A stretch of 64,000 nucleotides of DNA from positions 186,001 through 250,000 of IMG/VR virus record IMGVR_UViG_3300023184_000024; one strand, written 5' to 3'. Both the position numbers and the translations under genes were made by a program. Of this stretch, positions 6,752 through 30,257 are shown one piece after another. The notes beneath the pieces were generated by a model. That model searched no databases. It saw only the letters and a list, made by a program, of their open reading frames with translations, and was not told the DNA's origin. The stretch's first letter is position 1; each line of letters starts with the position of its first letter.

Positions 6752-6769
6752 AATATCTCGTCTTTGGAA

Positions 6770-6775
6770 TATTTA
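6770..6775 (-). promoter_or_regulatory. Late promoter motif TAAATA
   Basis: TAAATA 18 nt upstream of the gp6-like ATG; motif recurs before most structural genes; gp55 is encoded in this window. Confidence 0.6.
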
Positions 6776-6798
6776 TGGATCAAATAAAGTAGGCATAT

Positions 6799-15836: not shown

Positions 15837-16781
15837 ATGTCTTTACCAACTACACCAAAAGTAAACTATCTGAACAATAGAGATATTCTTAAAGAAATAC
15901 ATTTAAGCAAAAACACATATTGCAGTTATCGTGATCCAGTTACTGATCACCAATACGACATTATTTTACCCAGCGTTTCTAAAATCAATGTCAGAACAAT
16001 AGCAGAAGCTCGCCGAAATCGTGCTGATCGACTCAAACGAGAAACCGGAACTCCGGTTGACCCCAAGAAAATTCCCAACACTGATTTGGTGTTTAGAATT
16101 TCTTGCTGGGATCATATTCCAATTGCTCCTAAAAAAGTTCCCAAAACACAGGTCAAAAAACGCAAGATTGAAGACATTCTGGAAATCGAAGATACGCCCG
16201 AAGATGATGTCATTGACGATATACCTGCACTTGCTGCCGTAGTTGACACAGCACATGTGCGTGTAAACTTTCCTCCTTTTTGGCAATATCGACTTGATGA
16301 AAATAAAACTCCGTTTCTAGTAGGAAAAAGTCACTGGAAGGGTGATTTAGAAACCGGTGAATACAGTCGTGAGCACGGTAACATGACTCGTAAATTAGCA
16401 CTGATGTTTATTAAATTATGTGAACGATATGCAACAAGGAGCAACTGGCGTGGATACACCTACAACGAAGAAATGCGAGGACAAGCCTTGCTACAACTCA
16501 GTCAAATTGGACTCCAGTTCGATGAATCAAAATCGCAGAACCCTTTTGCGTATTATACTGCCGCTATCACTAATAGCTTTACTCGTGTCTTGAACATTGA
16601 AAAGAAGATGCAGAACATCCGCGATGATATTTTAGAAATGAATGGTCTCAATCCAAGTTGGACTCGACAAAATGCGGCAAATGGCAACCGGTCTGGCCCA
16701 GTTACTACCACTTCCTACGATACCGCCACCGAAAGCGATGTTGATCCAGCGCCTGATAATATCACAGTTCCAGAAAAATGA
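15837..16781 (+). CDS. gp55: Late-transcription sigma factor, T4 gp55-like
   Basis: NYLNNRDIL N-terminus; RYATRSNWRGYTYNEEM...FDESKSQNPFAYYT...F.R.L..EK motif; upstream of gp47/gp46 as in T4. Confidence 0.85.
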   Translation: MSLPTTPKVNYLNNRDILKEIHLSKNTYCSYRDPVTDHQYDIILPSVSKINVRTIAEARRNRADRLKRETGTPVDPKKIPNTDLVFRISCWDHIPIAPKKVPKTQVKKRKIEDILEIEDTPEDDVIDDIPALAAVVDTAHVRVNFPPFWQYRLDENKTPFLVGKSHWKGDLETGEYSREHGNMTRKLALMFIKLCERYATRSNWRGYTYNEEMRGQALLQLSQIGLQFDESKSQNPFAYYTAAITNSFTRVLNIEKKMQNIRDDILEMNGLNPSWTRQNAANGNRSGPVTTTSYDTATESDVDPAPDNITVPEK

Positions 16782-17704
16782 AATCCAAGTCTACGGTGAT
16801 TTTATACAACGGAGGATCGTATGGATCGTATCTGCACTGGCTGATTTATTCAATGACATTCGATGGCGAGTTATTTGAGCCGTTCACTAGCAAAGGAACC
16901 AGTCATGAATTTGGTCGATTGATCAAAGACGATCATGCACATCTAATTGGCTCGCCGACCATTGAAGAGTTGTTGGCCATGCCCAATGAGCAGATTCCGC
17001 CGTTGATAAAAATTCATCCAAAAACACAGCAAAGTGAAAGCTTGGTTGAGAATATCGAGTTGCTTTTAGAAAAATTTGAAAAATTAATCATAGTTTACCC
17101 GGACAAGAACTCATACCTACTAAACATCAACAATTATGTTTATAAGATTTGGGATGACTTATGGTCTGGAGCTCTTGGCCACATGCGCAAAGAAGATCTC
17201 TACAATAATTTTCCTATTGCACTCGATACACCCCTTGAAGACATACCCACGTGGATTATCAGAGAATATCTCAGCTACAACTTATTTGAATCCTGGGAAG
17301 ATCAAGTTGAGTGGTACCTCCCTCAACAGTATCAACATCCCGACTGCCACTATGTGTTTGTCAATGACTTGTTATACCAACCAATAAATACATTGAACAC
17401 AATCAAGCAGTTTGCAAACTTGTCTTGGGTGCGTAACCCTCAAGAAATATTGCCCTACCATGAAAAAAATCTTGTACTTCAGAAATACCTTGAGCAAGAT
17501 CACATTGCAAGAACAATATTAACTAATTTGATTGACAATGACTTTTGTTCTTGGGGCGCCGACGAAATTACTATCATCACCGAAGCATGGATACAAAAAG
17601 TTCTTAGAGATCACGGGTATAGTTTTAAATGCCACGGACTCAACCAATTTCCTTGCAACACAATCGACTTAACAAACCTAATAGAAAAACATGAATCTAT
17701 TTAA
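16778..17704 (+). CDS. Hypothetical protein, possibly sulfotransferase-like P-loop fold
   Basis: 308 aa; N-terminal YNGGSYGSYLHWL and KIHP segments; overlaps both neighbours. Confidence 0.4.
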   Translation: MKSKSTVILYNGGSYGSYLHWLIYSMTFDGELFEPFTSKGTSHEFGRLIKDDHAHLIGSPTIEELLAMPNEQIPPLIKIHPKTQQSESLVENIELLLEKFEKLIIVYPDKNSYLLNINNYVYKIWDDLWSGALGHMRKEDLYNNFPIALDTPLEDIPTWIIREYLSYNLFESWEDQVEWYLPQQYQHPDCHYVFVNDLLYQPINTLNTIKQFANLSWVRNPQEILPYHEKNLVLQKYLEQDHIARTILTNLIDNDFCSWGADEITIITEAWIQKVLRDHGYSFKCHGLNQFPCNTIDLTNLIEKHESI

Positions 17705-18704
17705 AAAAGCTGCCATCTTCACTGACATCCATTTTGGACTAAAGTCAAACAGTCAACTGCACAACGATGACTGCTTGAACTTTATCAAATGGGCCACTGC
17801 CAAGGCCAAAGCCGAAGGCTGTGAAACTTGTTTGTTTCTTGGCGACTGGCACAATAACCGAGCCAGTTTAAATATTGTCACATTGAACTACAGCTTACAA
17901 GCACTGGAGCACTTAAATGCAAATTTTAATGACGTCTACTTTATTCCTGGGAATCATGACTTGTATTATCGCGACAAACGGGATATACAAAGCGTGGAGT
18001 GGGCAAAACATCTCCCAAACGTACATATATGTAACGATTGGTTCAACAGTGGCGATGTGGTTATCGCTCCTTGGCTGTGTGGCGATGATCACAAGCGCAT
18101 ACCTAAGCTGACAGGCAAGTACATGTTTGGGCACTTTGAGTTGCCTGGTTACTTGATGAATGCCATGGTGGAAATGCCGGACCATGGTGAGGTACGCAGA
18201 GAAGATTTTACGAACTTTGAACATGTGTTCACCGGTCACTTTCACAAACGTCAGACCAAAAAGAACATCACCTACATTGGCAATTGCTTTCCGCACAACT
18301 ACGCCGATGCCGGTGACGATGATCGCGGGCTTGCTGTACTAGAATGGGGCAAAGATCCTGTGTATCATGCATGGCCTGACCAACCTAGATATCGAGTTTA
18401 TAAATTAGGCAATGTAATTGACCATGCTGCCACACTCTTGGCGCCCGGTATGCATGTTCGTGTAGAACTTGACATCGAGATCAGCTACGAAGAAGCAAAT
18501 TTTATCAAAGAAACATTTATTAAACAATACAATCTAAGAGAGATGGCGCTTATACCTAGTAAAAATTCCGGGGTTGACACAGACATGTCGCCAGGGGAAA
18601 TTAAATTTGAAAGCGTTGATCAGATTGTCATTGATCAAATTACAAAAATTGAATCAAATTTTTATGATCCAAAGCTGTTGCTTTCCATATACCAATCATT
18701 ATGA
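17691..18704 (+). CDS. gp47: Recombination nuclease subunit, gp47/SbcD/Mre11-like
   Basis: Metallophosphoesterase motifs DIHFG, GDWH, GNHD, GHFH. Confidence 0.9.
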   Translation: MNLFKKAAIFTDIHFGLKSNSQLHNDDCLNFIKWATAKAKAEGCETCLFLGDWHNNRASLNIVTLNYSLQALEHLNANFNDVYFIPGNHDLYYRDKRDIQSVEWAKHLPNVHICNDWFNSGDVVIAPWLCGDDHKRIPKLTGKYMFGHFELPGYLMNAMVEMPDHGEVRREDFTNFEHVFTGHFHKRQTKKNITYIGNCFPHNYADAGDDDRGLAVLEWGKDPVYHAWPDQPRYRVYKLGNVIDHAATLLAPGMHVRVELDIEISYEEANFIKETFIKQYNLREMALIPSKNSGVDTDMSPGEIKFESVDQIVIDQITKIESNFYDPKLLLSIYQSL

Positions 18705-19372
18705 CAAACATAGAATCTCTGAGACGAACTGACATCACTGATTTAAAAGAACTGGGGTTACAGTTCAACGAGCCGTGGCAGGTGGTAGATCATTTTGAAA
18801 AATTAGTAGCAGGATTTTTTGGAGCACAATACGGTGTGGCCACTGATTGTTGTAGTCATGGTATTGAACTTTGTTTGCGTATACTTCCGCGCTCAGAAAA
18901 AAATGTTGTTGTCCCAACCCATACATATATGAGTGTGCCAATGACATTAGAAATTCTATCAATCCCATATGAATTATCAGATTTAAAATGGCAAGGTAGC
19001 TATAAGTTAGATCCATACCCGATCATTGATGCTGCCACAATGTGGATGCCAAATTCGTATGTTCCGGGATCGATGACCGTTATTAGTTTTCAATATCAAA
19101 AATATCTACCCATTGGCCGTGGCGGAATGATTTTGCTAGATGATGTTACAATGTACAATAGGTTACAACGATTGGTGCGCGATGGTCGGGATCGTACAAT
19201 CAATCATAGAATTGACAATGTCAACGAAATAGGTTTTCATTATCATATGATCCCCGAAGATGCCGCACGAGGAATAAAATTGTTTGACTTGCGCAAAGGT
19301 ACATCTTTTGCTGGATGGTCTTGGCAGGATTATACAAATTTAAAAGACAAAGATATTTTCAAGGAAAAATAA
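18701..19372 (+). CDS. DegT/DnrJ/EryC1/StrS-family PLP aminotransferase (short form)
   Basis: FEKLVAGFFGAQYGVATDCCS, PTHTYMSV, IIDAA, SFQYQKYLPIGRGG (PLP lysine motif); only 223 aa. Confidence 0.75.
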   Translation: MTNIESLRRTDITDLKELGLQFNEPWQVVDHFEKLVAGFFGAQYGVATDCCSHGIELCLRILPRSEKNVVVPTHTYMSVPMTLEILSIPYELSDLKWQGSYKLDPYPIIDAATMWMPNSYVPGSMTVISFQYQKYLPIGRGGMILLDDVTMYNRLQRLVRDGRDRTINHRIDNVNEIGFHYHMIPEDAARGIKLFDLRKGTSFAGWSWQDYTNLKDKDIFKEK

Positions 19373-19373
19373 T

Positions 19374-19886
19374 ATGGTTGTAGGGCACATTACTCCGTGT
19401 TGGGATACGCAACAAATCAAAGATTTGCAGTACAAGGCTGATTATTATCAAGACACTGAGCTTATTAAGAAATACGCTCAATCAGGTCACAGCATGGCCC
19501 ACATGACATTGTTCAACTACTTTGAACCAAATCCCATGCCCGAGGCTGCCAGTCAAATAAAAAAACATTTTGATCATCTCGCTAATACCAGCATTGCTAT
19601 TAATAAATTCACGCCCGGACAATACCTACCAGTGCATCATGATTTCTATGGCAAATTTAAATCTGTTCATCAGTTAGATGATGCTGCCAATGTCATGCGA
19701 ATTATTATTATGATAGAAGATTCAGTGCCTGGACAGATTTTGCAAGTCGAGGATACCTCCTGGTGTAAATGGGTAGCTGGAGACTGGATTGCCTGGCACA
19801 ATTCTGCTAAACATGCATTTTACAATTTTAGTATGGTTGATAGATATGCATGGCAACTAACAGGAACTGTTGATAATATATGTTAA
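19374..19886 (+). CDS. 2OG-Fe(II) oxygenase-like protein
   Basis: PGQYLPVHHD (HxD), distal H (KHAF) and R (DRY). Confidence 0.65.
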   Translation: MVVGHITPCWDTQQIKDLQYKADYYQDTELIKKYAQSGHSMAHMTLFNYFEPNPMPEAASQIKKHFDHLANTSIAINKFTPGQYLPVHHDFYGKFKSVHQLDDAANVMRIIIMIEDSVPGQILQVEDTSWCKWVAGDWIAWHNSAKHAFYNFSMVDRYAWQLTGTVDNIC

Positions 19887-21001
19887 GCAAACCAAGAATA
19901 TCAACGTATTACAGTGAGCTTGTTAACAGCATTGCTGTTAGATACGGCTATAAGTTTTTGCATCAATGGCGTATAGTTGACTATGATTACCGATTTCATA
20001 CATTTGCAAGTGAGTTAGCTAGCCTTAAAAAAGATACCTTTGCGCCTGAAGAAAAATTTCTAATAGAACATGCTGATGTAGAGTATTTTGTCAACGGATT
20101 TGGGTTTAGCATTGATAACTTCAATACCATGATTAGATCTTTAGACATTGACCCGTGTAGGTTTGTTATTCTAACCAATCATTATTGCAGTACACAAAAG
20201 TGGAATAGTTATTGTTCAGATCCTAATAACCAGTTTCATGTAATCGAAACTCCTCTTTCAACATTGTTGGTTAACCACGATTACAAACCTGTTACATCAG
20301 CAGAAGAGTGTCAGTATCGATTTTGCTCAATGCTAGGGAAAAGTCGAGTACACAGAGATATTTTGGCCAAGTATTTTATTTCACAAAATCTTGTTAAGGA
20401 CAACTTGATTTCAGTTAATTTGTGGCCCGAACGAGCATCTAGTAGAACAAAAACCAGACAAGACGAACAAAAGTATATTAACAATTTATTTTTTTTACGT
20501 ACAGATCCGTTTGCTCGCATCAACGAACACTGGATACACGATCAATCATTGCTAGACATTGAAAAATTTGTTGTGATCAACGGACCATTGACCAATGATA
20601 TACTTAACTCTGCCACTAAGTCGCTTGCTCCTGAAGAATTGTATAAAAAAATATTTGTTGATATTGTAGCCGAGAGCGTTTACAACTATCCTCATGCATA
20701 CATTTCAGAAAAAACAATTAGACCTATTATATCTTCTCGACCGTTTATCATAGTTGGTGCTCCTGGTACATTGGCATGGTTACATCAACTTGGTTTCAAA
20801 ACATTTGACCAATACTGGGATGAAGACTACGATCAATGCACAGATTCCAATCAAAGATTTCATAAAATTTTTAAACTAATCGAAACCATCAACTCATGGC
20901 CTATTGCAAAATGTCAAGAAATTCTTACCTCTATGATGGAAATTTTTAAACACAACATTGAAGTCTACAACCATTGGGTAGAAAATCCGTTACATGTCTA
21001 A
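19880..21001 (+). CDS. Glycosyltransferase-like hypothetical protein
   Basis: DIVAESV...ISEKTIRPI....PFIIVG...GFKTF...WDEDYD; the SEK motif resembles GT10-like donor-binding motifs. Confidence 0.45.
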   Translation: MLSKPRISTYYSELVNSIAVRYGYKFLHQWRIVDYDYRFHTFASELASLKKDTFAPEEKFLIEHADVEYFVNGFGFSIDNFNTMIRSLDIDPCRFVILTNHYCSTQKWNSYCSDPNNQFHVIETPLSTLLVNHDYKPVTSAEECQYRFCSMLGKSRVHRDILAKYFISQNLVKDNLISVNLWPERASSRTKTRQDEQKYINNLFFLRTDPFARINEHWIHDQSLLDIEKFVVINGPLTNDILNSATKSLAPEELYKKIFVDIVAESVYNYPHAYISEKTIRPIISSRPFIIVGAPGTLAWLHQLGFKTFDQYWDEDYDQCTDSNQRFHKIFKLIETINSWPIAKCQEILTSMMEIFKHNIEVYNHWVENPLHV

Positions 21002-21833
21002 GCCTGTATTGCCGTTTGTTGAATCGATGATTATTCGGCCTTGCAATTTATCGTGTGAGGGTTGCACTACATTTTCTGATTTAAAATGGCAGGGTTATGT
21101 CACATGGGAACAGGGCAAACAGTCCTTGTCTCCTTGGGTGCAAAGATTAAACATCGAAGCATGGGGAGTCATGGGAGGGGAACCTTTTATGAATCCAGAG
21201 TTGGCAGATTGGCTTGTTGGTGTTCGCAGTCTGATGCCAGACACACAAATTAGATTAACCACAAACGGATTACTTGTAGAAAAAAATTGGCATGTAGTTG
21301 AGTTAATGCAACGGTTAGGCAATTGCATATTAAAACTTAGTCAGCATATAGAAGATACTTCAATTGACTCTATGGTAGATCGACTGTACTCTCAATGGAA
21401 CTGGTCCCCGGTACATGAGTACGGATTAAATCGGTTGGTCACTGACAACAAATTTAAATTTCAACTATCAAACACTTCTACATTTTATAAAACATTCAAA
21501 GGCAAGTACGAAAATATGTTGCCCCACAACAATACACCAGCAGACGCTTTTAAACATTGTTGTCAACAACGATGCCCAATGATTTACAAAGGTAGATTAT
21601 TTAAATGTGGCACCGTGGCTCTGACTCCCGAATTGCTGGATAGATTTGATCGTCCAAATTGGGACATGTGGCAAGACTATATTGTCCCAGGACTGGGTGC
21701 TGATTGTAATGATCGAGATCTAGAGCAATTTATTAATAACTTTGGGCGGCCTAACTCTCTTTGCAGACAATGCCCAACCGACCAAGATCATGACTCAGTA
21801 ATTGAACACAAAATAACAGTAACAAGGAAATAA
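20994..21833 (+). CDS. Radical SAM protein
   Basis: CNLSCEGC (CX3CX2C), GGEPF, TTNG, plus C-terminal Cys cluster. Confidence 0.85.
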   Translation: MSKPVLPFVESMIIRPCNLSCEGCTTFSDLKWQGYVTWEQGKQSLSPWVQRLNIEAWGVMGGEPFMNPELADWLVGVRSLMPDTQIRLTTNGLLVEKNWHVVELMQRLGNCILKLSQHIEDTSIDSMVDRLYSQWNWSPVHEYGLNRLVTDNKFKFQLSNTSTFYKTFKGKYENMLPHNNTPADAFKHCCQQRCPMIYKGRLFKCGTVALTPELLDRFDRPNWDMWQDYIVPGLGADCNDRDLEQFINNFGRPNSLCRQCPTDQDHDSVIEHKITVTRK

Positions 21834-21834
21834 C

Positions 21835-23007: not shown

Positions 23008-23009
23008 TA

Positions 23010-23038
23010 TTGCTTTCTGCCAAAGATTCAGCTATTAT
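23010..23038 (+). promoter_or_regulatory. Possible sigma70-type promoter for gp46
   Basis: TTGCTT-17 nt-TATTAT in the 39-nt intergenic gap. Confidence 0.4.
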
Positions 23039-23046
23039 AGTATGAT

Positions 23047-24810
23047 ATGATCAAAATTAAAAATATAACTGTTAAAAACTTTTTATCTGTGGGCAATGCA
23101 ACACAGGCTGTAAATTTTGATCGTAACGATCTAACATTGGTGCTTGGAGAAAATCTAGATCTTGGCGGAGACGGTAGTCGCAATGGTACTGGCAAAACCA
23201 CGTTGATTAATGCACTTAGCTACGCATTGTACGGCAATGCCATCAGCAATATTCGCAAAGACAATCTTATAAACCGAACCAATGGTAAATCCATGTTGGT
23301 TAGTTTAGAGTTTAGTGTGCAAGGAAAAGAGTACAAAGTCGAACGTGGGCGTAAACCCAATGTTCTTAAATTCTATATCAACAACGAAGAACAATCGTCT
23401 GAGGACAATGCACAAGGCGACAGCAGAGAAACACAGGATGCAATTGAACGTGTTCTCGGTATGAGTCACGACATGTTCAAACATGTACTAGCGTTGAACA
23501 CTTACACTGAACCGTTTTTAAGTTTAAAATCCAATGATCAACGTGCAATAATTGAACAGTTGTTAGGTATTACTCAGCTCAGTGAACGAGCAGATCGTAT
23601 CAAAGAGTTGAATCGAGTAACCAAGGACGCTATCTCTCAAGAAGAAATGCGCATACGAGCACAGCAAGAAGCTAATAAGCGAATTGAAGAACAGATAGAA
23701 GCTATAAAACGCAGACAAACATTGTGGAAAACCAAAAATGCCAATGACATTGCTGACCTAACCACCGCACTAATTTCGTTGCAAAATATAGACATTGACG
23801 TCGAGGTGCAAGCACACCGAGACCACAAGATATGGGAACAAAAACGCAAAGAGATCAACGAGTTGGCATCTGCAATTAGTCGTGCCAAACTTGATCTAGG
23901 ACGTGAAGAAAAAAACATTGCTAAGATAGTCAAAGATATTTCTGCATTAAAAAACCACACTTGCCATGCTTGTGGTCAAGACTTGCACGATTCAAAGCAT
24001 GAGGAAGTGTTAGCCGGCAAACAACAAGACTTGGAATCTGCAACAACCAGTGAACTTGCATTCTCTACTGAATTAGCTGTGTTGGAATCTACACACAAAG
24101 AGTTGGGAGTTCTAGGAAAACCTCCTAAAATGTTCTATGACAAAGAAGAAGATGCTATTCAGCATCGAGCTACTTTAGAAAATTTACAAAAACAAATTGC
24201 AGACAAATCCAATGATGTAGATCCTTACGGTGAACAAATTGACGAAATGCAAAATCAAGCACTAGTTGTGGTCACGTATGATGTGTTAAACGAGTTAACC
24301 AGACTACAAGACCATCAGGATTTCTTACTCAAGCTGTTGACCAACAAAGACAGTTTTATCCGCAAAAAAATTATTGAGCAAAATCTCAGCTACCTTAATA
24401 ATAGATTAACACATTATCTTGATCGCATCGGACTACCACATCAAGTTGTTTTCCAAACTGACTTAACTGTTGAAATTACAGAGCTGGGTCGAGATTTAGA
24501 TTTCGACAACCTGAGCAGAGGCGAGCGCAATAGATTGATCCTGTCGATGTCGTGGGCATTCAGAGACGTTTGGGAAAGCTTGTACTATCCAATTAATCTC
24601 TTGTTCATTGACGAACTAGTCGATTCTGGTATGGACACGCAGGGTGTTGAAAATAGCTTATCTTTACTAAAGAAAATGAGCAGAGAACGCCACAAGAGTA
24701 TCTGGTTAGTAAGCCACAGAGATGAACTAGCAGGACGAGTAGAGAATATACTTCGTGTAATTAAAGAGAACGGATTTACTACATACAATACAGATGTGGA
24801 TGTATTATAA
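23047..24810 (+). CDS. gp46: Recombination ATPase subunit, gp46/SbcC/Rad50-like
   Basis: Walker A NGTGKTT, coiled coil with CHACG zinc hook, signature LSRGE, Walker B LLFIDE, VSH. Confidence 0.92.
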   Translation: MIKIKNITVKNFLSVGNATQAVNFDRNDLTLVLGENLDLGGDGSRNGTGKTTLINALSYALYGNAISNIRKDNLINRTNGKSMLVSLEFSVQGKEYKVERGRKPNVLKFYINNEEQSSEDNAQGDSRETQDAIERVLGMSHDMFKHVLALNTYTEPFLSLKSNDQRAIIEQLLGITQLSERADRIKELNRVTKDAISQEEMRIRAQQEANKRIEEQIEAIKRRQTLWKTKNANDIADLTTALISLQNIDIDVEVQAHRDHKIWEQKRKEINELASAISRAKLDLGREEKNIAKIVKDISALKNHTCHACGQDLHDSKHEEVLAGKQQDLESATTSELAFSTELAVLESTHKELGVLGKPPKMFYDKEEDAIQHRATLENLQKQIADKSNDVDPYGEQIDEMQNQALVVVTYDVLNELTRLQDHQDFLLKLLTNKDSFIRKKIIEQNLSYLNNRLTHYLDRIGLPHQVVFQTDLTVEITELGRDLDFDNLSRGERNRLILSMSWAFRDVWESLYYPINLLFIDELVDSGMDTQGVENSLSLLKKMSRERHKSIWLVSHRDELAGRVENILRVIKENGFTTYNTDVDVL

Positions 24811-25437
24811 ATGGACTCAATAATTGAACTTGATAGCTGGATTACGCTGAAAGAAATAGACGATCTATTGGCCATTGCCAACACATGGGACAAAGTTGAA
24901 TACACTGCAAAAGAAGGAAAATTTCCTGGAAAATTGGTTGCAACACAAAGTTGGCATACCTGGGATAACAATGATGATCTTGGAAAAATTTTGCATGACC
25001 GTATGCAGTCAGTTATTGGCAATCACCGGGTAGTCGAATTGGACTATGTAGAGCTATACTTGCCGTGGGATATACATTGCGATTATGAACGTCCATTCCC
25101 GACACCTAACCCTTATTATAGTTTTTTGATTCCTTTACAATCCTTTCCTAGTAGAACTATATTTTTTGAACAAATCGCAGACTACAATGATTTTTGGAAA
25201 TACAAACAACACAACAGGCATGTTGAAAATTGTGTTGACCTAGAATTTTGGAACAATAATCTAAGTCACTGCTGGGACGAAGACCGACTATACTTGTCGT
25301 TACAGCATGTTAGCAAGCAATGGATTGCCGGCGATGCTATATGCTTCAAACGTGATATCTTACACAGCAGTGATGATTTTTATGTACGTCATCCGGGACC
25401 AAAGAAATTTTTACAAATTTTAACCGACACAGTATGA
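24811..25437 (+). CDS. 2OG-Fe(II) oxygenase-like protein
   Basis: IHCD (HxD), SFLIPL strand, distal LHSS. Confidence 0.5.
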   Translation: MDSIIELDSWITLKEIDDLLAIANTWDKVEYTAKEGKFPGKLVATQSWHTWDNNDDLGKILHDRMQSVIGNHRVVELDYVELYLPWDIHCDYERPFPTPNPYYSFLIPLQSFPSRTIFFEQIADYNDFWKYKQHNRHVENCVDLEFWNNNLSHCWDEDRLYLSLQHVSKQWIAGDAICFKRDILHSSDDFYVRHPGPKKFLQILTDTV

Positions 25438-25955
25438 ACATTCTTATAACTGGTACAAAAGGATTGGCTGAAGCATTGGGAAGATTATTGTCACAAGACA
25501 ACCACGTTACTTGTGTCAGCAAATCCAATGGATACAACATTGCTGATATCATGACATGGGGACCAAAATTTTATCACTACGATGTTTGTATTAACTGTTG
25601 TTATGATACGTGGCATCAAGTTGGTGTGTTGGAACAATTTTATTATGCATGGCGCAATGATTCATCAAAGCAAATTATAAACATTGGTTCAATTATCAGT
25701 GACTATACTCGCACAGACGTGACTACTGAGCACGAATATCTAGCATATCGTGTTCATAAACAGGCATTACAAACTGCATTTAACAAACTTAGTAGATCAG
25801 CCAAATGCGATATTAAACTAATCAATCCAGGTGCAATTGACACTGATATGATAAAGCACATGGACTGTGTTAAAATGTCTCCGGAGTGGTTGGCTACCCA
25901 AATTAAAAATGTTATGTCGCAAACATGGTTAAAGAGAGTTGACTTATGGCAATAA
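25434..25955 (+). CDS. Short-chain dehydrogenase/reductase
   Basis: ILITGTKGLA Rossmann start, IINIGS, YRVHK (YxxxK), INPGAIDTDM. Confidence 0.8.
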   Translation: MNILITGTKGLAEALGRLLSQDNHVTCVSKSNGYNIADIMTWGPKFYHYDVCINCCYDTWHQVGVLEQFYYAWRNDSSKQIINIGSIISDYTRTDVTTEHEYLAYRVHKQALQTAFNKLSRSAKCDIKLINPGAIDTDMIKHMDCVKMSPEWLATQIKNVMSQTWLKRVDLWQ

Positions 25956-27049
25956 ATTGGCAATACTATCATTGGCACTTGGAACTCAGCGCAGTTTGTG
26001 CTCTTCAATGTCCTCGCTGTCCAAGAACAGAACATCCAGATACTCCTTGGTTAAATTACAGCATGAGTTTGGATTTTTTTAAATCCTTTATGACTCCTGA
26101 CATGTTAAAAAACAAAGTAAAAAGATTGACCATGTGCGGAGATGTAGGTGATCCAATTTACTGCAAAGATTTCCTTGACATATACAAATATATCAAAGAA
26201 GTCAATCCTAAAATACATGTGTATACTATTACCAACGGCAGCAATCGAAAAGCCGAGTGGTGGCAGGCATTTGCACAAGTTGCCAACGAGTATGACACAA
26301 TAAATTTCAGCATCGATGGGTACGATCAACTCAGCAATGCAATGTATCGTGTTGGCAGTAACTGGCAATCTATCATGACTGGTATTAGCACTCTTAGAAA
26401 ATACAATACAAAAATTCTAATCAACTGGGCAATGATTGTTTTTAAGTTCAATCAAAACCATATTGGTAAAATACAAGCATTGGCTAGTGACCTAGGAATG
26501 GATGCTTTGCAAATTACAAAAAGCACCAAGTTTGGCAGCAAGTACGGAGAAGCATATCTTGGCGTTAATGATTATCTTGAGCCAGACAGCAAATGGATTT
26601 CACCAAGTCATCGTTACGAACGTTCGATGATTAACATCAGTGGTCGACAACCACTTAATCAAGAGTTTATAATACAAAACAAGCAACAATACATTGCTAT
26701 CAAGCAAGAGTATCATAACAAACCAATCACTCCGCTGTGCGAAATTGGCAATAGAGGACTGTATGTCAATGCCGAAGGTGTATTATTTCCATGCAGTTGG
26801 ACTAGTTTTCCTTATAAAAGTTTGAGTAATGGTGTAAAAACCATAGAATGGAAGGATAGCTTTTTTGCTATGTACAGAGAGCAAATGAACTTACGTACAC
26901 GATCGTTGGACGAAATACTCAACGATCCACTATGGGACAAGTGCAGCCAAGGTTGGCATGACGAGTCTAAGACTTGGGTAGAATGCCAGCAAAAATGTAA
27001 TACCAGTATTGTTGATGTAAATTATGCAGTGGGTTGGGAAACCAATTAA
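25946..27049 (+). CDS. Radical SAM protein with SPASM/twitch-like C-terminus
   Basis: CALQCPRC, TNG, FSIDG, and C-terminal C...G..FPC...CQQKC. Confidence 0.85.
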   Translation: MAINWQYYHWHLELSAVCALQCPRCPRTEHPDTPWLNYSMSLDFFKSFMTPDMLKNKVKRLTMCGDVGDPIYCKDFLDIYKYIKEVNPKIHVYTITNGSNRKAEWWQAFAQVANEYDTINFSIDGYDQLSNAMYRVGSNWQSIMTGISTLRKYNTKILINWAMIVFKFNQNHIGKIQALASDLGMDALQITKSTKFGSKYGEAYLGVNDYLEPDSKWISPSHRYERSMINISGRQPLNQEFIIQNKQQYIAIKQEYHNKPITPLCEIGNRGLYVNAEGVLFPCSWTSFPYKSLSNGVKTIEWKDSFFAMYREQMNLRTRSLDEILNDPLWDKCSQGWHDESKTWVECQQKCNTSIVDVNYAVGWETN

Positions 27050-27465
27050 TGAAATTCTACCTGGGCCTAGAACATCCAACACTTAACAGAGTACGGTTAC
27101 TTGTTGATCAACGAGAAATCACAGACTGCGAAGTAGTATCTCAATGGGAATCAACTGTTGATGTTACTAGAACAACCAGCATTGAAGTTTGGTTTTGGCC
27201 TTGGGGTATTAAACCATTGTTAAGAGTTAATGGGCACTTAGTAGATTTTAGTTTGGCAAAAGTAGATCAATTTGATCATATGTTAAAGTTCAACTTGACC
27301 AAAGACTTTTTTAATCTATACGGCCAAGAGTTAGTGACCAGTAGAATTGAGTCACAGTTCAAGAATGGTGTTGTTGACAAAGACGTTTACGATTCAGTCA
27401 TTGGATTTGGACAGCACCACTATGATTTGGTTGAAAAAATAAAACGACGATTAGTTAATGGATAA
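27049..27465 (+). CDS. Hypothetical protein
   Basis: Start placed at ATG 27049 (TAATG overlap with upstream stop); no recognisable motif. Confidence 0.55.
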   Translation: MKFYLGLEHPTLNRVRLLVDQREITDCEVVSQWESTVDVTRTTSIEVWFWPWGIKPLLRVNGHLVDFSLAKVDQFDHMLKFNLTKDFFNLYGQELVTSRIESQFKNGVVDKDVYDSVIGFGQHHYDLVEKIKRRLVNG

Positions 27466-28951
27466 CAAAAAGTTTGCGTTTGTAACTGTACCTGTGCTAG
27501 AGCTATGGAATCCATCGGCTGCATTGGCTGCGCTTACTCCAATGATAAAACGCCACGGACTTGAGCCACAACTGATTGACATAAACCTAGAGCTCAACGA
27601 AATGTTGTCCGAGGCTGATTGGGATCAATTCAACGATTGGGCAAGTATGGTCACTGATCAAATTGACGATCAGTTGATCATCCGTGTGCTAGACATAGTA
27701 GATCAACACTTGTCTACTATAGAGTGCGGTTGGTTGGCTTTCAGTGTATTTTCATTTTACAGCGTTAGGCCAACGGCACTAATATTATCCCATCTAGGAA
27801 AAAACAGCAGTCGACAACATAAAATATTGTTAGGCGGCAGCGGTACAATGAGTAGCATGGCAGAATTTGGTCAAAAACCTTTTGGCCAGTGGTGTTTAGA
27901 AAACAATCTTGCAGACTACTGTATATTTGGCGAAGGTGAACAGGCCTTAGATAATCTTCTCAGCGGCAATGACCAATATCCCGGAATCAACAATACCAAT
28001 TTTACACAGATCACCAATCTTGATACATTGCCGTTGCCTGAATATTCAAGTTTTGATTTTTCTAGGTACAAAGACAGTCGAGTGTTATTAACTGGTAGTC
28101 GTGGATGTGTTAGACATTGCACATTCTGTGACATTGACTTGACTTGGCCAAAATACACTTACCGCAGTCCACACTTGATTGTTGAAGAGATGCGGCGACA
28201 TGTGCACGAATTGGGAGTAAGTAAATTTGAATTCACTGACAGTCTCATCAATGGATCAGTGTCAAACTGGAACAAATTCAACGAGTTGCTAATTGAGGCC
28301 AAGGCCAAGGACCCAGCAATGAAAGATGTCAGTTACATGGGTCAGTTTATTTGCAGGAATCGCACTAGTATGCATTCAAGCACCTATGAACTCATGCACT
28401 ACGCTGGATGTAAACAAATACATGTGGGCATCGAACACTTCAGTGAACGAGTTCGTTATCACATGAAGAAAAAATTCAGTGACGCAGACATTGACTATCA
28501 CTTGGAAATGAGCAGTCGTTGGCACATTCCAAATATTTTTTTGATGATTGTAGGTTATCCAACTGAAACCTTGCAGGATCATCAACAACAATTAAAAGCA
28601 ATAGAAAAATATCAAATTTATGCACAAACTGGCGCTATCTTTATGCTACGATGGGGTCTTACCATGCATATCTACGAAAACACTCCGTTGACAAAAATGT
28701 CAAACGAACTACAGTTGTCGTTTACAGACAATGCATTTCATGACAGCGTTTTCAACTGGGTCGCTGGTGTTAACCCGACTCTGGACTTGGCGGAACGTAT
28801 CCGTCGCAGAGTTGAACTACACGAGCTCAGTGCAAAATTAGGGTATTCAATGCCCAACACCAGAAAAGAACTAGCAAGTTTATTACAGCTCACAGAACAA
28901 ATGCACCTTATTAAACCACCACCAAAAACTATTCAAATAATACCAGCTTAA
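27458..28951 (+). CDS. B12-binding-domain radical SAM protein
   Basis: N-terminal cobalamin-binding-like region (KILLGG...GEGE), SRGCVRHCTFC, GIEHFSE, VGYPTET. Confidence 0.85.
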   Translation: MDNKKFAFVTVPVLELWNPSAALAALTPMIKRHGLEPQLIDINLELNEMLSEADWDQFNDWASMVTDQIDDQLIIRVLDIVDQHLSTIECGWLAFSVFSFYSVRPTALILSHLGKNSSRQHKILLGGSGTMSSMAEFGQKPFGQWCLENNLADYCIFGEGEQALDNLLSGNDQYPGINNTNFTQITNLDTLPLPEYSSFDFSRYKDSRVLLTGSRGCVRHCTFCDIDLTWPKYTYRSPHLIVEEMRRHVHELGVSKFEFTDSLINGSVSNWNKFNELLIEAKAKDPAMKDVSYMGQFICRNRTSMHSSTYELMHYAGCKQIHVGIEHFSERVRYHMKKKFSDADIDYHLEMSSRWHIPNIFLMIVGYPTETLQDHQQQLKAIEKYQIYAQTGAIFMLRWGLTMHIYENTPLTKMSNELQLSFTDNAFHDSVFNWVAGVNPTLDLAERIRRRVELHELSAKLGYSMPNTRKELASLLQLTEQMHLIKPPPKTIQIIPA

Positions 28952-29010
28952 ATTTTTACAATTCACAAACATAAGATAACTATAGCACAAGGACAAACTC
29001 CAACACATTC

Positions 29011-29445
29011 ATGACATGGCTTTATCAAAACACCCCAGTTGAGACATTGCCCGAAGATTGTATAGGATTTGTTTATCTAATCACAAATACAACCAGCTCA
29101 CGCAAATACATAGGCAAAAAACTAGCAAAATTCTCCAAGACTACACAACGAACAGTTAAACTCAAGAATGGTACCAAGAAGAAAAAAAAGATTCGCAATA
29201 AAGTTGATTCAGATTGGCGAGACTATTATGGGTCTAGTCCTGAACTTAGCAAGGATGTGGAACTTTTTGGCAAAGATAATTTTATCAGAGAAATACTTTA
29301 TTATTGTAAATCAAAATCAGAATGTAGCTATATTGAGGCAAGAGAACAATTTTCAAGGCGTGTATTAGAATCATCAGATTATTACAACGGGCATATTCAA
29401 GTCCGTGTTCATGGTTCTCATATCAAAGACAAACTAAGCAATTAA
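29011..29445 (+). CDS. Stand-alone GIY-YIG nuclease
   Basis: GFVYLITNTTSSRKYIGKK, YYGSS, conserved E (YIEARE) and YYN; 144 aa with no C-terminal DNA-binding domain; Lys-rich insert. Confidence 0.8.
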   Translation: MTWLYQNTPVETLPEDCIGFVYLITNTTSSRKYIGKKLAKFSKTTQRTVKLKNGTKKKKKIRNKVDSDWRDYYGSSPELSKDVELFGKDNFIREILYYCKSKSECSYIEAREQFSRRVLESSDYYNGHIQVRVHGSHIKDKLSN

Positions 29446-30254: not shown

Positions 30255-30257
30255 GTG

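What the first reader, a model, noticed from the sequence alone, without database searches (positions are those of the whole stretch)
16778..28951. Biosynthetic-type enzyme cluster interleaved with gp55/gp47/gp46
Seen: a DegT-family aminotransferase, an amidinotransferase, an SDR, three radical SAM enzymes (one B12-type), two 2OG-Fe(II) oxygenases, a GT-like and a sulfotransferase-like ORF are translationally coupled with core genes. Established: dehydrogenase, then DegT/StrS aminotransferase, then amidinotransferase is the logic of streptidine (guanidino-cyclitol) synthesis; B12 radical SAM enzymes are often methyltransferases. Inference: the phage may build an unusual guanidino- or methyl-decorated sugar or residue to modify its virion, DNA or the host surface. 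The product cannot be determined from sequence.
Basis: partly seen in the sequence, partly recalled or inferred. Interest (0 to 1): 0.6.

Follow-up and report, generated by a model that had tools for sequence, protein, structure and literature searches.

The report
Shuffled sugar-tailoring gene cassettes, jumbo phage
A giant freshwater phage has packed the gaps between three of its core replication genes with small, movable cassettes of sugar-tailoring enzymes, probably to build an unusual decorated sugar coat whose product and target are still unknown.

Summary
The gene run is real. Thirteen co-directional, mostly overlapping ORFs fill the three junctions of a conserved gp55-gp47-gp46 module in a complete 353-kb freshwater jumbo phage.

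Tools confirm:
- an amidinotransferase with Cys/His/Asp kept;
- three radical-SAM enzymes, one B12-class-like;
- one 2OG/Fe(II) oxygenase by fold, and a second probable one;
- a GT-B (GT10-like) glycosyltransferase;
- a 223-aa 'mini-DegT' that keeps the PLP lysine;
- a short SDR.

'Sulfotransferase-like' stays a lead.

This is not one inherited pathway operon. Relatives keep only small cassettes (C-D, E-F-G, I-M, K-J), shuffled among a few hot spots between core genes. The amidinotransferase is 61-85% identical in 70 viral contigs yet sits at six or more different sites.

The same families are multi-copy across the genome: 16 radical-SAM genes, at least 8 GT10-like, 3 amidinotransferase-like. 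Paralogues lie beside plain nucleotide-sugar enzymes.

Best reading: part of a dispersed phage toolkit that makes and transfers heavily tailored amino/guanidino sugars. The acceptor is unknown. Virion or host surface is likelier than DNA, because ThyX is present and no hydroxymethylase or DpdA was found. The streptidine-like gene logic is not supported.

The parts
15837..16781 (+). gp55-type late sigma factor (core gene; start of the co-directional run)
   Evidence: phrog_12791 2.8e-73. 72-79% identical in sister contigs, 39-41% in PA5oct/Atu_ph07/Phosso.
16778..17704 (+). A: 308-aa protein of unknown family; the sulfotransferase-like fold is only a lead
   Evidence: No Pfam/PHROG/NCBIfam/PDB hit. 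35 metagenomic homologues without Pfam domains. Invariant N-terminal GxYGxY, H43, H80, K82. Atlas structure TM 0.46-0.51 to sulfotransferase clusters. Paralogue at genome 89370.
17691..18704 (+). gp47 (SbcD/Mre11-like nuclease subunit), core gene
   Evidence: phrog_100 8.3e-61; Metallophos 25.3 bits.
18701..19372 (+). C: 'mini-DegT', a 223-aa PLP-enzyme homologue. It lacks about 40 residues of the large domain and most of the C-terminal domain.
   Evidence: PF01041 1.1e-12. PDB alignments to sugar aminotransferases. More than 1300 clusters of about 220-aa homologues. Invariant D110 and S129-F130-x3-K134. Same gp47-C-D order in L087/L088.
19374..19886 (+). D: small (170 aa) probable double-stranded beta-helix / 2OG-Fe(II) oxygenase-like protein
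   Evidence: Invariant H88-x-D90...H147 in 5 family members. Weak Pfam 2OG-FeII_Oxy_3, Asp_Arg_Hydrox, JmjC, Cupin_2. hhalign to the I family over the distal His strand, E 7e-4. Four paralogues in the genome.
19880..21001 (+). E: GT-B fold glycosyltransferase, GT10 (fucosyltransferase)-like
   Evidence: Family of 70 proteins in 45 loci. Conserved E..TEK motif aligns to the FEN..YVTEK motif of FUT11. AF2 pLDDT 73. VIA Z 9.3 FUT11, 8.3 FUT9, 8.2 T4 beta-GT; all top Foldseek hits are GT-B GTs. Eight copies in the genome, and a ninth seen through relatives' E proteins.
20994..21833 (+). F: 279-aa radical SAM enzyme with a Cys-rich C-terminus
   Evidence: PF04055 31.3 bits (cut-off 29.5). CNLSCEGC at 17-24. 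49-58% identical orthologues next to G in 11 loci; the wider F cluster occurs in 13 loci.
21835..23007 (+). G: amidinotransferase-family (pentein fold) enzyme, the most conserved accessory gene of the run
   Evidence: PDB phmmer: HsvA 3.8e-9, StrB1, AGAT, SxtG. H234, D236, C370, R89-D90 invariant, also in two genomic paralogues. 70 IMG/VR loci at 61-85% identity. 568 representative relatives in 1.84 billion.
23047..24810 (+). gp46 (SbcC/Rad50-like ATPase subunit), core gene
   Evidence: phrog_77 4.4e-100; AAA_23. 51% identity to PA5oct.
24811..25437 (+). I: Fe(II)/2-oxoglutarate-dependent oxygenase
   Evidence: AF2 pLDDT 94.9. Foldseek SnoN/SnoK, OkaE, AsqJ, P4H, E down to 8e-8. H89 31/31, D/E91 31/31, H185 31/31, K198 31/31. 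Paired with a B12-type radical SAM in L006, L059 and at genome 4667-6738.
25434..25955 (+). J: short (173 aa) SDR-like oxidoreductase
   Evidence: NCBIfam SDR families, best 2.4e-6, all far below cut-offs. TGTKGLAEA and Y105-x3-K109 in the sequence. One homologue (L015) next to a K-type radical SAM.
25946..27049 (+). K: radical SAM enzyme with a SPASM/twitch-like C-terminal Cys domain
   Evidence: PF04055 38.7 bits; SPASM 17.9 bits (below cut-off 21.5). CALQCPRC. TIGR04317 6e-14, twitch rSAM 1.4e-8. Four paralogues.
27034..27465 (+). L: 138-143-aa orphan ORF (TTG at 27034, or ATG at 27049)
   Evidence: No family and no homologue in the genome or the 70 loci. Not detectably related to the conserved small ORF that follows other M-type genes.
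27458..28951 (+). M: B12-class-like radical SAM enzyme (putative methyltransferase)
   Evidence: PF04055 53.4 bits. CVRHCTFC. TIGR04072 6e-21, TIGR03975 2e-20, PhpK family 7e-20, all below cut-offs. Four paralogues. No match in 50,697 phage records.
29011..29445 (+). SegE-like GIY-YIG homing endonuclease that closes the run
   Evidence: PF19835 3.6e-33. 53-79% identical at the same place in sister contigs.

Best explanation
The stretch is a hot spot, not a single inherited biosynthetic operon.

The three junctions of a conserved gp55-gp47-gp46 module are filled with small cassettes of tailoring enzymes:
- A, sulfotransferase-like;
- C+D, a mini-DegT PLP enzyme plus a small oxygenase;
- E+F+G, a GT10-like glycosyltransferase, a radical SAM enzyme and an amidinotransferase;
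- I...M, a 2OG oxygenase and a B12-type radical SAM enzyme;
- J+K, a mini-SDR and a SPASM radical SAM enzyme.

All are read through with the core genes as one tightly coupled transcription/translation unit.

These cassettes are members of multi-copy families spread over the whole 353-kb genome. Together with plain nucleotide-sugar enzymes elsewhere in that genome, they most likely form a phage-encoded toolkit. The toolkit would convert a host NDP-hexose into heavily tailored deoxy-amino sugars (aminated, amidinated to a guanidino group, C-methylated, hydroxylated or epimerised, carbamoylated, perhaps sulfated). The GT10-like transferases would then move these sugars onto an acceptor in the cytoplasm.

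I rank virion proteins first as acceptor, host envelope glycans second and DNA last.

Shown: the gene identities and folds, the cassette structure, the paralogy, and the adjacency to sugar genes. Inferred: the sugar substrate, the guanidino product and the acceptor.
For: Gene identities.

Insertion into a conserved module: PA5oct, Atu_ph07 and Phosso have gp55-gp47-gp46 without these genes, and Phosso has a different glycosyltransferase in the gp55|gp47 gap.

Cassettes recur in uncultivated relatives:
- E lies within four genes of G in 44 of 71 loci, and F in 13.
- gp47-C-D recurs in L087/L088.
- I+M pairs occur in L006, L059 and at genome 4667-6738.
- K+J occurs in L015.
- L059 holds I, M, E, G, F and D within 14 kb.

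Genome-wide repertoire: 16 radical-SAM hits; 8 copies of E by phmmer plus a ninth seen through relatives' E proteins; G x3, D x4, K x4, M x4, I x2, A x2.

Link to sugars:
- Genome 149.6-158.3 kb encodes a dTDP-glucose-4,6-dehydratase-like SDR (1.7e-33), a full-length PseC-like DegT (1e-42), E, E, G' and a NodU-type carbamoyltransferase.
- Genome 329-333 kb encodes E, an NDP-sugar dehydrogenase (2.2e-40), D' and G''.
- In relatives the mini-DegT sits beside a hexapeptide acyltransferase, the usual partner for N-acylating amino sugars.
- SAM methyltransferases also occupy the same hot spots.

The catalytic residues of G and its paralogues, of C and of I are strictly conserved.

Marine cyanomyovirus contigs combine a G-like protein with carbamoyltransferases, a radical SAM enzyme, a 2OG oxygenase and GT11/GT25. 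Comparable clusters in jumbo cyanophages have been predicted to decorate polysaccharide or to make a sugar/amino-acid metabolite (PMC7824862).

Cytoplasmic acceptor: no Bac_transf or Glycos_transf_4 initiating transferase was found.
Against: - No product or acceptor is shown, and none of the window's own genes is a classical nucleotide-sugar enzyme by curated cut-offs.
- G has no Pfam/NCBIfam hit. Its acceptor could be a polyamine or an amino acid, as for its best PDB match HsvA.
- G is as conserved as the DNA polymerase (61-85%) while the GTs beside it are only 27-38% identical. That is odd for enzymes of one variable glycan.
- SPASM and B12 radical SAM enzymes are at least as typical of peptide maturation as of sugar chemistry.
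- The E model is only moderate (pLDDT 73; best Z 9.3, where Z 7-8 is common background).
- Only two families of lipid-carrier initiators were tested, and host enzymes could supply that step.
Confidence: 0.45

Rival explanations
1. The enzymes make a diffusible small molecule: an aminoglycoside-, guanidino-cyclitol- or amidinated-polyamine-type metabolite. It would act as an antibiotic, a signal or a DNA counter-ion rather than as a glycan on a macromolecule.
For: - The enzyme set (DegT, amidinotransferase, SDR, twitch/SPASM and B12 radical SAM, 2OG oxygenase, carbamoyltransferase, GT) is also the aminoglycoside toolbox (established knowledge of the btr/gen/str pathways).
- The best solved relative of G is the polyamine amidinotransferase HsvA.
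- The strong conservation of G fits a fixed small substrate.
- Similar cyanophage clusters were read as 'antibiotic synthesis genes' or secondary-metabolite systems (PMC12801897; PMC7824862).
Against: - There is no conserved gene set or order that would define one pathway.
- At least eight paralogous GT10-like transferases per genome fit oligosaccharide assembly better than a single metabolite.
- No cyclitol synthase, kinase/phosphatase or exporter was identified among the roughly 70 proteins scanned.
Confidence: 0.15
2. The radical SAM enzymes, 2OG oxygenases, methyltransferases and the pentein-fold enzyme modify phage or host proteins or peptides (RiPP-like or structural-protein maturation), independently of sugars.
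For: - K and the N-terminal-SPASM family resemble peptide maturases, and M's near-best family hit (2e-20, second to a lipid B12-radical-SAM family at 6e-21) is 'RiPP maturation radical SAM C-methyltransferase'.
- A conserved ORF of about 140 aa follows M-type genes in four contexts.
- Contigs L096/L098 carry a G'-like gene among 5-7 radical SAM genes and no recognised sugar gene.
- Campylobacter phages have 5 radical SAM genes plus an amidinotransferase (PMC2853527).
- An amidinotransferase and a 2OG oxygenase were found in the S-SCSM2R virion proteome (PMC12801897).
Against: - No precursor peptide or recognition element has been identified.
- G matches amidinotransferases, not peptidyl-arginine deiminases.
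- G and D paralogues lie next to NDP-sugar enzymes, and GTs are the commonest partner of G.
Confidence: 0.15
3. The cassettes are unrelated, independently acquired accessory genes ('morons' or stuffer) that merely pile up at permissive junctions. There is no joint pathway.
For: - Gene order and content differ in nearly every relative.
- A, J and L have one homologue or none among the 70 loci.
- G moved repeatedly between the same few sites.
- 'Stuffer DNA' was considered for cyanophage LPS clusters (PMC3037559).
Against: - Catalytic residues are strictly kept across hundreds of homologues.
- The same families co-localise again and again in different orders.
- There is tight translational coupling.
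- All identified members are tailoring enzymes rather than a random sample of genes.
Confidence: 0.15
4. The enzymes hypermodify the phage DNA (a glycosylated or amino/guanidino-decorated base) to evade restriction.
For: - The location is beside replication/recombination genes.
- E's fold also matches the T4 alpha- and beta-glucosyltransferases (Z 7.8-8.2).
- PLP and radical SAM enzymes occur in known thymidine hypermodification pathways (own knowledge of the phage M6 and ViI systems).
Against: - The complete genome has no ThyA-like dNMP hydroxymethylase and no DpdA/TGT.
- It does encode ThyX, which makes ordinary dTMP.
- The GT motif is of the GDP-sugar/GT10 type.
- G sits at many sites unrelated to replication genes, for example beside the head-tail adaptor.
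Confidence: 0.07

Closest known systems
Polysaccharide ('LPS') modification clusters and sugar/amino-acid 'secondary metabolite' clusters of jumbo and T4-like cyanophages (P-SSM2, S-SSM6a; PMC7824862, PMC3037559)
   Same: - Paralogous glycosyltransferases, NDP-sugar enzymes, carbamoyltransferases, 2OG and cupin-like DSBH oxygenases and methyltransferases.
- Sporadic and polymorphic between related phages.
- Function only predicted.
- A G-like gene occurs in such cyanophage contigs.
   Different: - This is a non-cyanophage freshwater lineage nearest to PA5oct/Atu_ph07.
- The genes are not in one island; they are scattered as 2-3-gene cassettes at core-gene junctions.
- 16 radical SAM genes, three amidinotransferase-like genes and mini-DegT/mini-SDR forms dominate.
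- No halogenase, sugar kinase or nucleotidyltransferase was seen among the proteins scanned.
Synechococcus phage S-SCSM2R 'antibiotic synthesis genes' and its amidinotransferase-2OG oxygenase pair (PMC12801897)
   Same: - A DegT-family (AHBA_syn) gene, a radical SAM enzyme and an inosamine amidinotransferase occur together.
- A second amidinotransferase is followed by 2OG oxygenases, near KdsA/KdsB, a GT and a sulfotransferase.
- Its ORF266 is one of only four phage records that match G (27% identity).
   Different: Only distant homology. That phage has single copies in a cyanophage AMG region, and its function is equally unknown. The virion-proteome detection applies to that phage only.
Radical SAM + glycine amidinotransferase module of Campylobacter phages CP220/CPt10 (PMC2853527)
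   Same: - A T4-like myovirus with 11-12 radical SAM genes.
- An exchangeable central module of five radical SAM genes plus an amidinotransferase.
- Judged to be acquired en bloc.
   Different: No detectable sequence match to G, G' or M in the phage collection. The host and habitat differ, and no GT10-like family is reported there.
Streptidine branch of streptomycin biosynthesis (StsC-type DegT aminotransferase, StrB1 inosamine-phosphate amidinotransferase)
   Same: G is homologous to StrB1 (2e-4 over the catalytic C-terminus, with Cys and His aligned). C is a DegT/StrS-family member.
   Different: - The dehydrogenase-aminotransferase-amidinotransferase trio is not conserved in relatives.
- C lacks the C-terminal domain.
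- No inositol or cyclitol enzymes, kinases or phosphatases were found.
- The partners are glycosyltransferases and radical SAM enzymes.
Virus-encoded glycosylation machineries (Mimivirus fibril sugars, chlorovirus capsid glycans, glycosylated mycobacteriophage virions; own knowledge; Freeman 2023 as cited in PMC12801897)
   Same: The virus carries its own 4,6-dehydratase, DegT aminotransferase, tailoring enzymes and several GTs, and glycosylates in the cytoplasm without a lipid-carrier route.
   Different: Virion glycosylation is not shown here. Amidinotransferases and a large radical SAM complement are not part of those systems, as far as I know.

Membership tests
Amidinotransferase family (pentein fold; AGAT, StrB1, HsvA, SxtG) - ORF G | Significant full-length sequence similarity to characterised members | tested here: met
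   phmmer against PDB: HsvA 3.8e-9 (three collinear stretches from residue 3 to 384), StrB1 2.2e-4, AGAT 6e-4. The Pfam and NCBIfam models gave no hit, so it is a divergent subfamily.
Amidinotransferase family - ORF G | Catalytic Cys-His(-Asp) residues in the conserved H-x-D and H-C-x-T motifs | tested here: met
   HGD (H234, D236) aligns to HsvA HID. GIHCVT (C370) aligns to SFHCAT. These residues are invariant in 19 diverse members and in both genomic paralogues.
Amidinotransferase family - ORF G | Transfers an amidino group from arginine to an amine acceptor | not testable with these tools
   Needs an enzyme assay. Hydrolase relatives of the same fold (deiminases, DDAH) cannot be excluded by sequence, although none appeared among the matches.
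DegT/DnrJ/EryC1/StrS sugar aminotransferases - ORF C | Pfam PF01041 above the gathering score, with the PLP-binding Lys and the pyridine-N Asp | tested here: met
   48.3 bits against a cut-off of 19.8. D110 and K134 are invariant in 37 members.
DegT/DnrJ/EryC1/StrS sugar aminotransferases - ORF C | Two-domain architecture of about 360-400 residues | tested here: not met
   C is 223 aa. The alignments cover profile positions about 25-77 and 185-252 only. All 120 listed homologues are 218-241 aa. It is therefore a distinct 'mini-DegT' lineage, not a canonical member.
Radical SAM superfamily - ORFs F, K, M | PF04055 above cut-off and a CxxxCxxC cluster motif | tested here: met
   31.3, 38.7 and 53.4 bits against a cut-off of 29.5. 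Motifs CNLSCEGC, CALQCPRC and CVRHCTFC.
Class B (cobalamin-binding) radical SAM methyltransferases - ORF M | N-terminal B12-binding domain plus similarity to class B families | tested here: inconclusive
   Best NCBIfam hits are all B12-radical-SAM families (6e-21 to 7e-20) with alignments starting at residues 105-171, but all are far below the curated cut-offs. No separate B12-domain Pfam hit was found.
SPASM/twitch radical SAM - ORF K | C-terminal auxiliary Fe-S Cys domain | tested here: inconclusive
   SPASM 17.9 bits, below the cut-off of 21.5. Twitch-family NF033640 1.4e-8, below cut-off.
Fe(II)/2-oxoglutarate oxygenases - ORF I | Double-stranded beta-helix fold with the HX(D/E)...H triad and a basic 2OG-binding residue | tested here: met
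   pLDDT 94.9. 324 PDB matches at E<=1e-3, all listed top ones 2OG oxygenases. H89, D/E91, H185 and K198 in 31/31.
Fe(II)/2-oxoglutarate oxygenases - ORF D | The same fold and triad | tested here: inconclusive
   HxD...H is invariant in 5 members. Only weak Pfam hits, the best 0.0032 in a paralogue. hhalign to the I family has probability 27%.
Short-chain dehydrogenases/reductases - ORF J | Rossmann TGxxxGxG, catalytic YxxxK, about 250 residues, family HMM above cut-off | tested here: inconclusive
   The motifs are present. But J is 173 aa, and the best HMM scores 27 bits against a cut-off of 279.
GT-B glycosyltransferases, GT10 fucosyltransferase-like - ORF E | Two Rossmann-like domains; a C-terminal nucleotide-sugar motif (..E..YxTEK..) | tested here: inconclusive
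   E277 and K278 are (nearly) invariant in 40 members. The profile aligns to the FUT11 motif at E 0.11. VIA Z is 9.3/8.3 to FUT11/FUT9, and all other top hits are GT-B, but Z 7-8 is common background and the Foldseek E-values are only about 7e-3. The GT-B fold is likely; GT10 membership is unproven.
Sulfotransferases - ORF A | PAPS-binding 5'-PSB/3'-PB motifs and the sulfotransferase fold | tested here: inconclusive
   Only the Atlas gives a link: structure TM 0.46-0.51, feature score 0.93-0.94 to sulfotransferase clusters. There are no HMM or PDB sequence hits.
Streptidine-type guanidino-cyclitol pathway | Co-inherited dehydrogenase + StsC-type aminotransferase + amidinotransferase (with phosphorylation steps) | tested here: not met
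   The trio is not found together in any of 70 related loci. Only E-(F)-G, C-D, I-M and K-J recur. No kinase, phosphatase or cyclitol enzyme was seen among the proteins scanned.
T4-type gp55 / gp47 / gp46 core module | Homology to the late sigma factor and to the SbcD/SbcC-like recombination nuclease pair, in conserved order | tested here: met
   PHROG hits at 2.8e-73, 8.3e-61 and 4.4e-100. The same order occurs in PA5oct, Atu_ph07 and Phosso.

The most novel reading that the evidence does not exclude
The near-universal, site-hopping amidinotransferase G converts a phage-made NDP-amino sugar (or a sugar already on a glycan) into a guanidino sugar, working with its GT10-like and radical-SAM neighbours. 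A whole clade of freshwater jumbo phages would then coat virions with a cationic, guanidino-decorated, C-methylated glycan. That would be a kind of viral glycan, and a use of amidinotransferases and class-B radical SAM enzymes, not described for any virus. The mini-DegT family (more than 1300 clusters) would be a new minimal sugar aminotransferase.
Probability: 0.15. Interest if true: 0.8.

Novelty: new variant of a known kind. Interest (0 to 1): 0.55.

Why it matters
Large phages are known to carry sugar and 'secondary-metabolite-like' genes, but no product or target has been established for the cyanophage and Campylobacter-phage examples. This freshwater jumbo-phage clade is an extreme and well-sampled case: 16 radical SAM genes, at least eight paralogous glycosyltransferases and three amidinotransferase-like genes.

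It offers three concrete handles:
- a very conserved amidinotransferase that can be expressed and assayed;
- an abundant, uncharacterised 220-aa DegT form with its PLP residues intact;
- conserved two-gene cassettes that define minimal units to reconstitute.

It also shows how accessory enzymes are shuffled among a few junctions between core genes. That warns against reading gene adjacency in such phages as pathway order.

If the product is a virion glycan, it bears on phage-host recognition and on particle stability in lakes.

Tried and rejected
- Megablast of the whole region against 50,697 phage records found no match.
- The search for related loci with E alone found nothing, because its exact-word patterns were too divergent. 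The E family was recovered instead by clustering ORFs of the G loci.
- Sequence searches of A, D, E and I against PDB, singly or as profiles, gave nothing significant.
- My first idea that ORF D was the missing C-terminal half of a split DegT was rejected. D has its own HxD...H family.
- My second idea that C is a decayed remnant was rejected by more than 1300 conserved short homologues.
- The sigma-70 promoter and terminator scan gave counts near the shuffled expectation (promoter-like 58 vs 48.7 ± 6.5; terminator-like 16 vs 10.0 ± 3.0), so it was uninformative.
- The T4 late-promoter word TATAAATA occurs once in the window, below chance.
- No conserved DNA flank travels with G.
- The genome-contig scan for bacterial homologues of G returned only MAG contigs. 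At least one of them (L091) is plainly a mis-binned phage of this family, so there was no bacterial context to borrow a function from.
- Longer G-like proteins (P0190, P0240, P0247) have no Pfam family on record for the whole protein, so they gave no Rosetta-stone hint.
- A motif-from-memory guess that the 162-aa ORF at 30258-30746 is an aminoacyl-tRNA protein transferase got no support from PDB.
- No RNA run holds the region, so expression is untested.
- Read laying was kept to 6,000 letters.

Full report
WHAT THE WINDOW IS

The window is bases 186001-250000 of a single-contig virus record of 352,754 bp. The record has direct terminal repeats and is estimated 100% complete.

Its gp46 is 51% identical to that of Pseudomonas phage PA5oct and 45-46% to Agrobacterium phage Atu_ph07 and Sinorhizobium phage Phosso. 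It is therefore an uncultivated jumbo myovirus of that broad group.

Near-identical DNA occurs in lake and freshwater metagenomes from several studies. Short contigs from an independent study match with zero differences. They bridge the gp47|C, C|D, D|E and F|G junctions, and one reaches 17 letters across G|gp46. The arrangement is therefore not an assembly artefact.

THE OBSERVATION

From 15837 to 29445 there is one co-directional run of 15 ORFs. Successive genes overlap by 4-16 nt or are separated by 0-1 nt, except for 39 nt before gp46 and 59 nt before the last gene.

Three of the ORFs are core genes: gp55 late sigma factor, gp47 and gp46. The other ORFs are as follows.

- A (16778-17704, 308 aa). 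No family hit. It has 35 metagenomic homologues and a genomic paralogue. Only the ESM Atlas links it, weakly, to sulfotransferases.
- C (18701-19372, 223 aa). DegT family by Pfam.
- D (19374-19886, 170 aa). A small protein with an invariant HxD...H and weak 2OG-oxygenase/cupin hits.
- E (19880-21001, 373 aa). A family with a conserved E...TEK motif that aligns to the GT10 fucosyltransferase motif. Its model (pLDDT 73) matches only GT-B glycosyltransferases, best FUT11 at Z 9.3.
- F (20994-21833). Radical SAM.
- G (21835-23007, 390 aa). Amidinotransferase family: HsvA 3.8e-9, StrB1, AGAT and SxtG. The catalytic His, Asp and Cys are aligned and invariant.
- I (24811-25437, 208 aa). A 2OG/Fe(II) oxygenase by a confident model (pLDDT 95; SnoN 8e-8), with a perfectly conserved HX(D/E)...H...K.
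- J (25434-25955, 173 aa). A short SDR-like protein with TGxxxG and YxxxK.
- K (25946-27049). Radical SAM with a SPASM/twitch-like tail.
- L (27034-27465). An orphan.
- M (27458-28951, 497 aa). Radical SAM; its best family matches are all B12-dependent classes.
- A SegE-like GIY-YIG endonuclease closes the run.

Three qualifications apply: the DegT and the SDR are miniature forms, one oxygenase is only probable, and 'sulfotransferase' is a lead.

THE DEGT IS NOT A REMNANT

I first suspected a split or decayed gene. ORF D proved to be a family of its own. The big protein search then found more than 1300 clusters of 218-241-aa homologues of C, many on contigs of 130-340 kb.

In 37 of them the PLP lysine (K134, in S-F-x3-K) and the aspartate that pairs with the pyridine nitrogen (D110) are invariant. 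C is therefore a conserved 'mini-DegT' that lacks the usual C-terminal domain. The genome also has a normal 340-aa DegT elsewhere.

WHAT RELATIVES SHOW

PA5oct has gp55, gp47 and gp46 back to back. Atu_ph07 has one small ORF between gp47 and gp46. Phosso has a glycosyltransferase and small ORFs in the gaps. The junctions of this module are thus insertion sites.

A scan of IMG/VR with G returned 70 loci at 61-85% identity. I clustered all ORFs of these loci and mapped them onto the 353-kb genome. They come from the same phage family: DNA polymerase is 77-81% identical, UvsX 77-85% and helicase 64-79%, in collinear order.

G nevertheless lies at different places in different members:
- between gp47 and gp46;
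- between gp32 and UvsX;
- just upstream of the DNA polymerase;
- beside the head-tail adaptor;
- near the helicase;
- at other sites.

A maximum-likelihood tree of G needs at least 7 and most parsimoniously 22 changes of location. It contains well-supported sister pairs that sit at different sites. The tree was the quick search, not the finished careful one.

No conserved DNA flank moves with G. G is as conserved as the best core proteins, yet nomadic.

WHAT TRAVELS TOGETHER

- E-type genes lie within four genes of G in 44 of 71 loci, often in two or three divergent copies. F does so in 13 loci.
- The order gp55-gp47-C-D recurs in L087/L088.
- In other members the mini-DegT lies at the polymerase hot spot, beside a hexapeptide acyltransferase.
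- I pairs with an M-type radical SAM in L006, in L059 and at 4667-6738 of this genome. There, and after the M-type gene of L015, it is followed by a conserved ORF of about 140 aa. The window's copy lacks that ORF.
- K pairs with a J homologue in L015.
- L059 has I, M, E, G, F and D within 14 kb.

The cluster is therefore a mosaic of two- to three-gene cassettes. The whole set, and in particular the SDR-DegT-amidinotransferase trio that underlies the streptidine analogy, is not conserved.

THE REST OF THE GENOME GIVES THE BEST CLUE TO FUNCTION

The families are multi-copy:
- 16 radical-SAM matches;
- 8 E-type genes by phmmer, plus a ninth between gp32 and UvsX seen through relatives' E proteins;
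- three amidinotransferase-like genes, all with the catalytic residues;
- four D, four K-type, four M-type, two I and two A.

At 149.6-168.7 kb the following lie together:
- a dTDP-glucose-4,6-dehydratase-like SDR;
- a PseC-like full-length DegT;
- two E genes;
- the G' paralogue;
- a NodU-type carbamoyltransferase;
- a block of at least six radical SAM genes, at least three of which carry the SPASM-like domain at the N-terminus.

At 329-333 kb an E gene, an NDP-sugar dehydrogenase, a D paralogue and the G'' paralogue are adjacent. In relatives, SAM methyltransferases share the hot spots.

The amidinotransferase, oxygenase and GT families are thus embedded in nucleotide-sugar chemistry.

The complete genome has no ThyA-like hydroxymethylase and no DpdA/TGT, and it does encode ThyX. 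That argues against the two known routes to hypermodified phage DNA. It also has no Bac_transf or Glycos_transf_4 initiating transferase.

MOST LIKELY MECHANISM

The shown facts are fold and family assignments, conserved catalytic residues, cassette co-occurrence, paralogy and adjacency to sugar genes.

From these I infer the following. The phage converts a host NDP-hexose through a 4-keto-6-deoxy intermediate into amino sugars (DegT and mini-DegT). It then tailors them by amidination to a guanidino group (G family), by hydroxylation or epimerisation (I and D; SnoN, the top structural match of I, epimerises an amino sugar), by C-methylation or other radical chemistry (M, K, F), by carbamoylation and perhaps by sulfation. 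The GT10-like E enzymes then transfer the sugars to an acceptor.

Read-through with gp55, gp47 and gp46 would express the window's cassettes together with those genes; timing was not tested.

The acceptor is not determined. I rank virion proteins first, by analogy with giant viruses and glycosylated mycobacteriophages and because no lipid-carrier initiator was found. Host envelope glycans come second, as proposed for cyanophage 'LPS' clusters (PMC7824862). DNA comes last.

My confidence in the glycan-toolkit reading is about 0.45.

POINTS THAT DO NOT FIT WELL

- G is far more conserved than its GT neighbours.
- Its best solved relative amidinates polyamines.
- SPASM and B12 radical SAM enzymes are typical of peptide maturation.
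- Two MAG contigs (L096, L098) and the Campylobacter phages CP220/CPt10 combine an amidinotransferase with many radical SAM genes, without obvious sugar genes (PMC2853527).

These points keep three readings alive: a small-molecule product, a protein-modification role, and 'no joint pathway'.

COMPARISON WITH WHAT IS KNOWN

Polymorphic sugar and 'secondary-metabolite-like' clusters in jumbo cyanophages have been described and interpreted only by prediction (PMC7824862; PMC3037559).

Cyanophage S-SCSM2R was reported to carry a DegT-family gene, a radical SAM enzyme and an inosamine amidinotransferase, plus a second amidinotransferase followed by 2OG oxygenases. Their function was left unexplained (PMC12801897).

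Marine cyanomyovirus contigs hold a G-like protein near carbamoyltransferases, a radical SAM enzyme, a 2OG oxygenase and GT11/GT25.

Among 50,697 deposited phage genomes, only S-SCSM2R and three fragments of one marine virus match G or G', and none matches M. Among 1.84 billion representative proteins, 568 relate to G.

I therefore class the finding as a new variant of a known kind. The features new to the literature I could search are:
- the clade (freshwater, PA5oct-related);
- the scale of the radical SAM and GT10-like expansions;
- the nomadic, highly conserved amidinotransferase;
- the mini-DegT family;
- the organisation as cassettes at core-gene junctions.

LIMITS

D, A, G and L were therefore not folded, and most of the roughly 420 genes of the genome were not annotated.
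- Gene calls in related loci are crude longest-ORF calls.
- No RNA data exist for the region.

Noticed in passing
window 21835-23007, and loci L004-L073: The amidinotransferase gene G is single-copy and 61-85% identical across 70 contigs of one jumbo-phage family. Yet it occupies at least six different junctions between core genes. Its tree forces repeated relocations between the same few sites, and no conserved flanking DNA travels with it.
   Followed up: yes
window 18701-19372; proteins P0065-P0184: There is a very large (more than 1300 clusters at 90% identity), uncharacterised family of about 220-aa 'mini-DegT' proteins. The PLP Lys and Asp are invariant, but the C-terminal domain is missing. 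Many members lie on 130-340-kb contigs.
   Followed up: partly
G000 159481-168693 (L074 10481-19693, minus strand); L045:7195-8442: A block of at least six radical SAM genes. In at least three of them the SPASM-like Cys domain lies at the N-terminus, before the radical SAM core, which is an unusual order. The same family (c21) recurs in the hot spots of relatives.
   Followed up: partly
window 29922-31201, minus strand (ORFs of 110, 162 and 170 aa): Homologues of the 162- and 170-aa ORFs lie directly beside G-like genes in distant contigs (L093, L095, L096) and beside the second, divergent G copy of L004. This hints at a functional partner. No family was found for them, and a PDB search of the 162-aa ORF was blank.
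   Followed up: partly
G000 6701-7153; L006, L015, L059 (ORFs just after M-type genes): A conserved ORF of about 140 aa, with a D..D..GKI..D..I motif, follows B12-type radical SAM genes in four contexts. The window's M (27458-28951) lacks it and is instead preceded by the unrelated orphan L.
   Followed up: partly
L096 and L098 (MAG contigs labelled Bdellovibrio / Pseudobdellovibrionaceae): A G'-like amidinotransferase sits among 5-7 radical SAM genes, including a 33%-identical relative of M. This recalls the radical SAM + amidinotransferase module of Campylobacter phages CP220/CPt10. Whether these contigs are bacterial or viral was not settled.
   Followed up: no
L091 (MAG contig labelled Haliscomenobacter sp.), also L092-L095: GTDB MAG contigs that carry G are, at least for L091, mis-binned phage contigs of this family (DNA polymerase 80% identical, same gene order). 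The bin labels are inconsistent and should not be read as the host.
   Followed up: partly
window 29011-29445: A SegE-like GIY-YIG homing endonuclease is conserved (53-79%) just after the gp46 hot spot in sister lineages. It does not travel with G.
   Followed up: partly
window 48905-58405, + strand: A 3166-aa open reading frame lies within the structural-gene region. It was not analysed.
   Followed up: no
window 23047 (start of gp46); read laying loose ends in runs X3 and X5: In two lake metagenomes, contigs that match gp46 continue upstream into a different sequence. That is consistent with co-occurring relatives that lack G at this junction.
   Followed up: no
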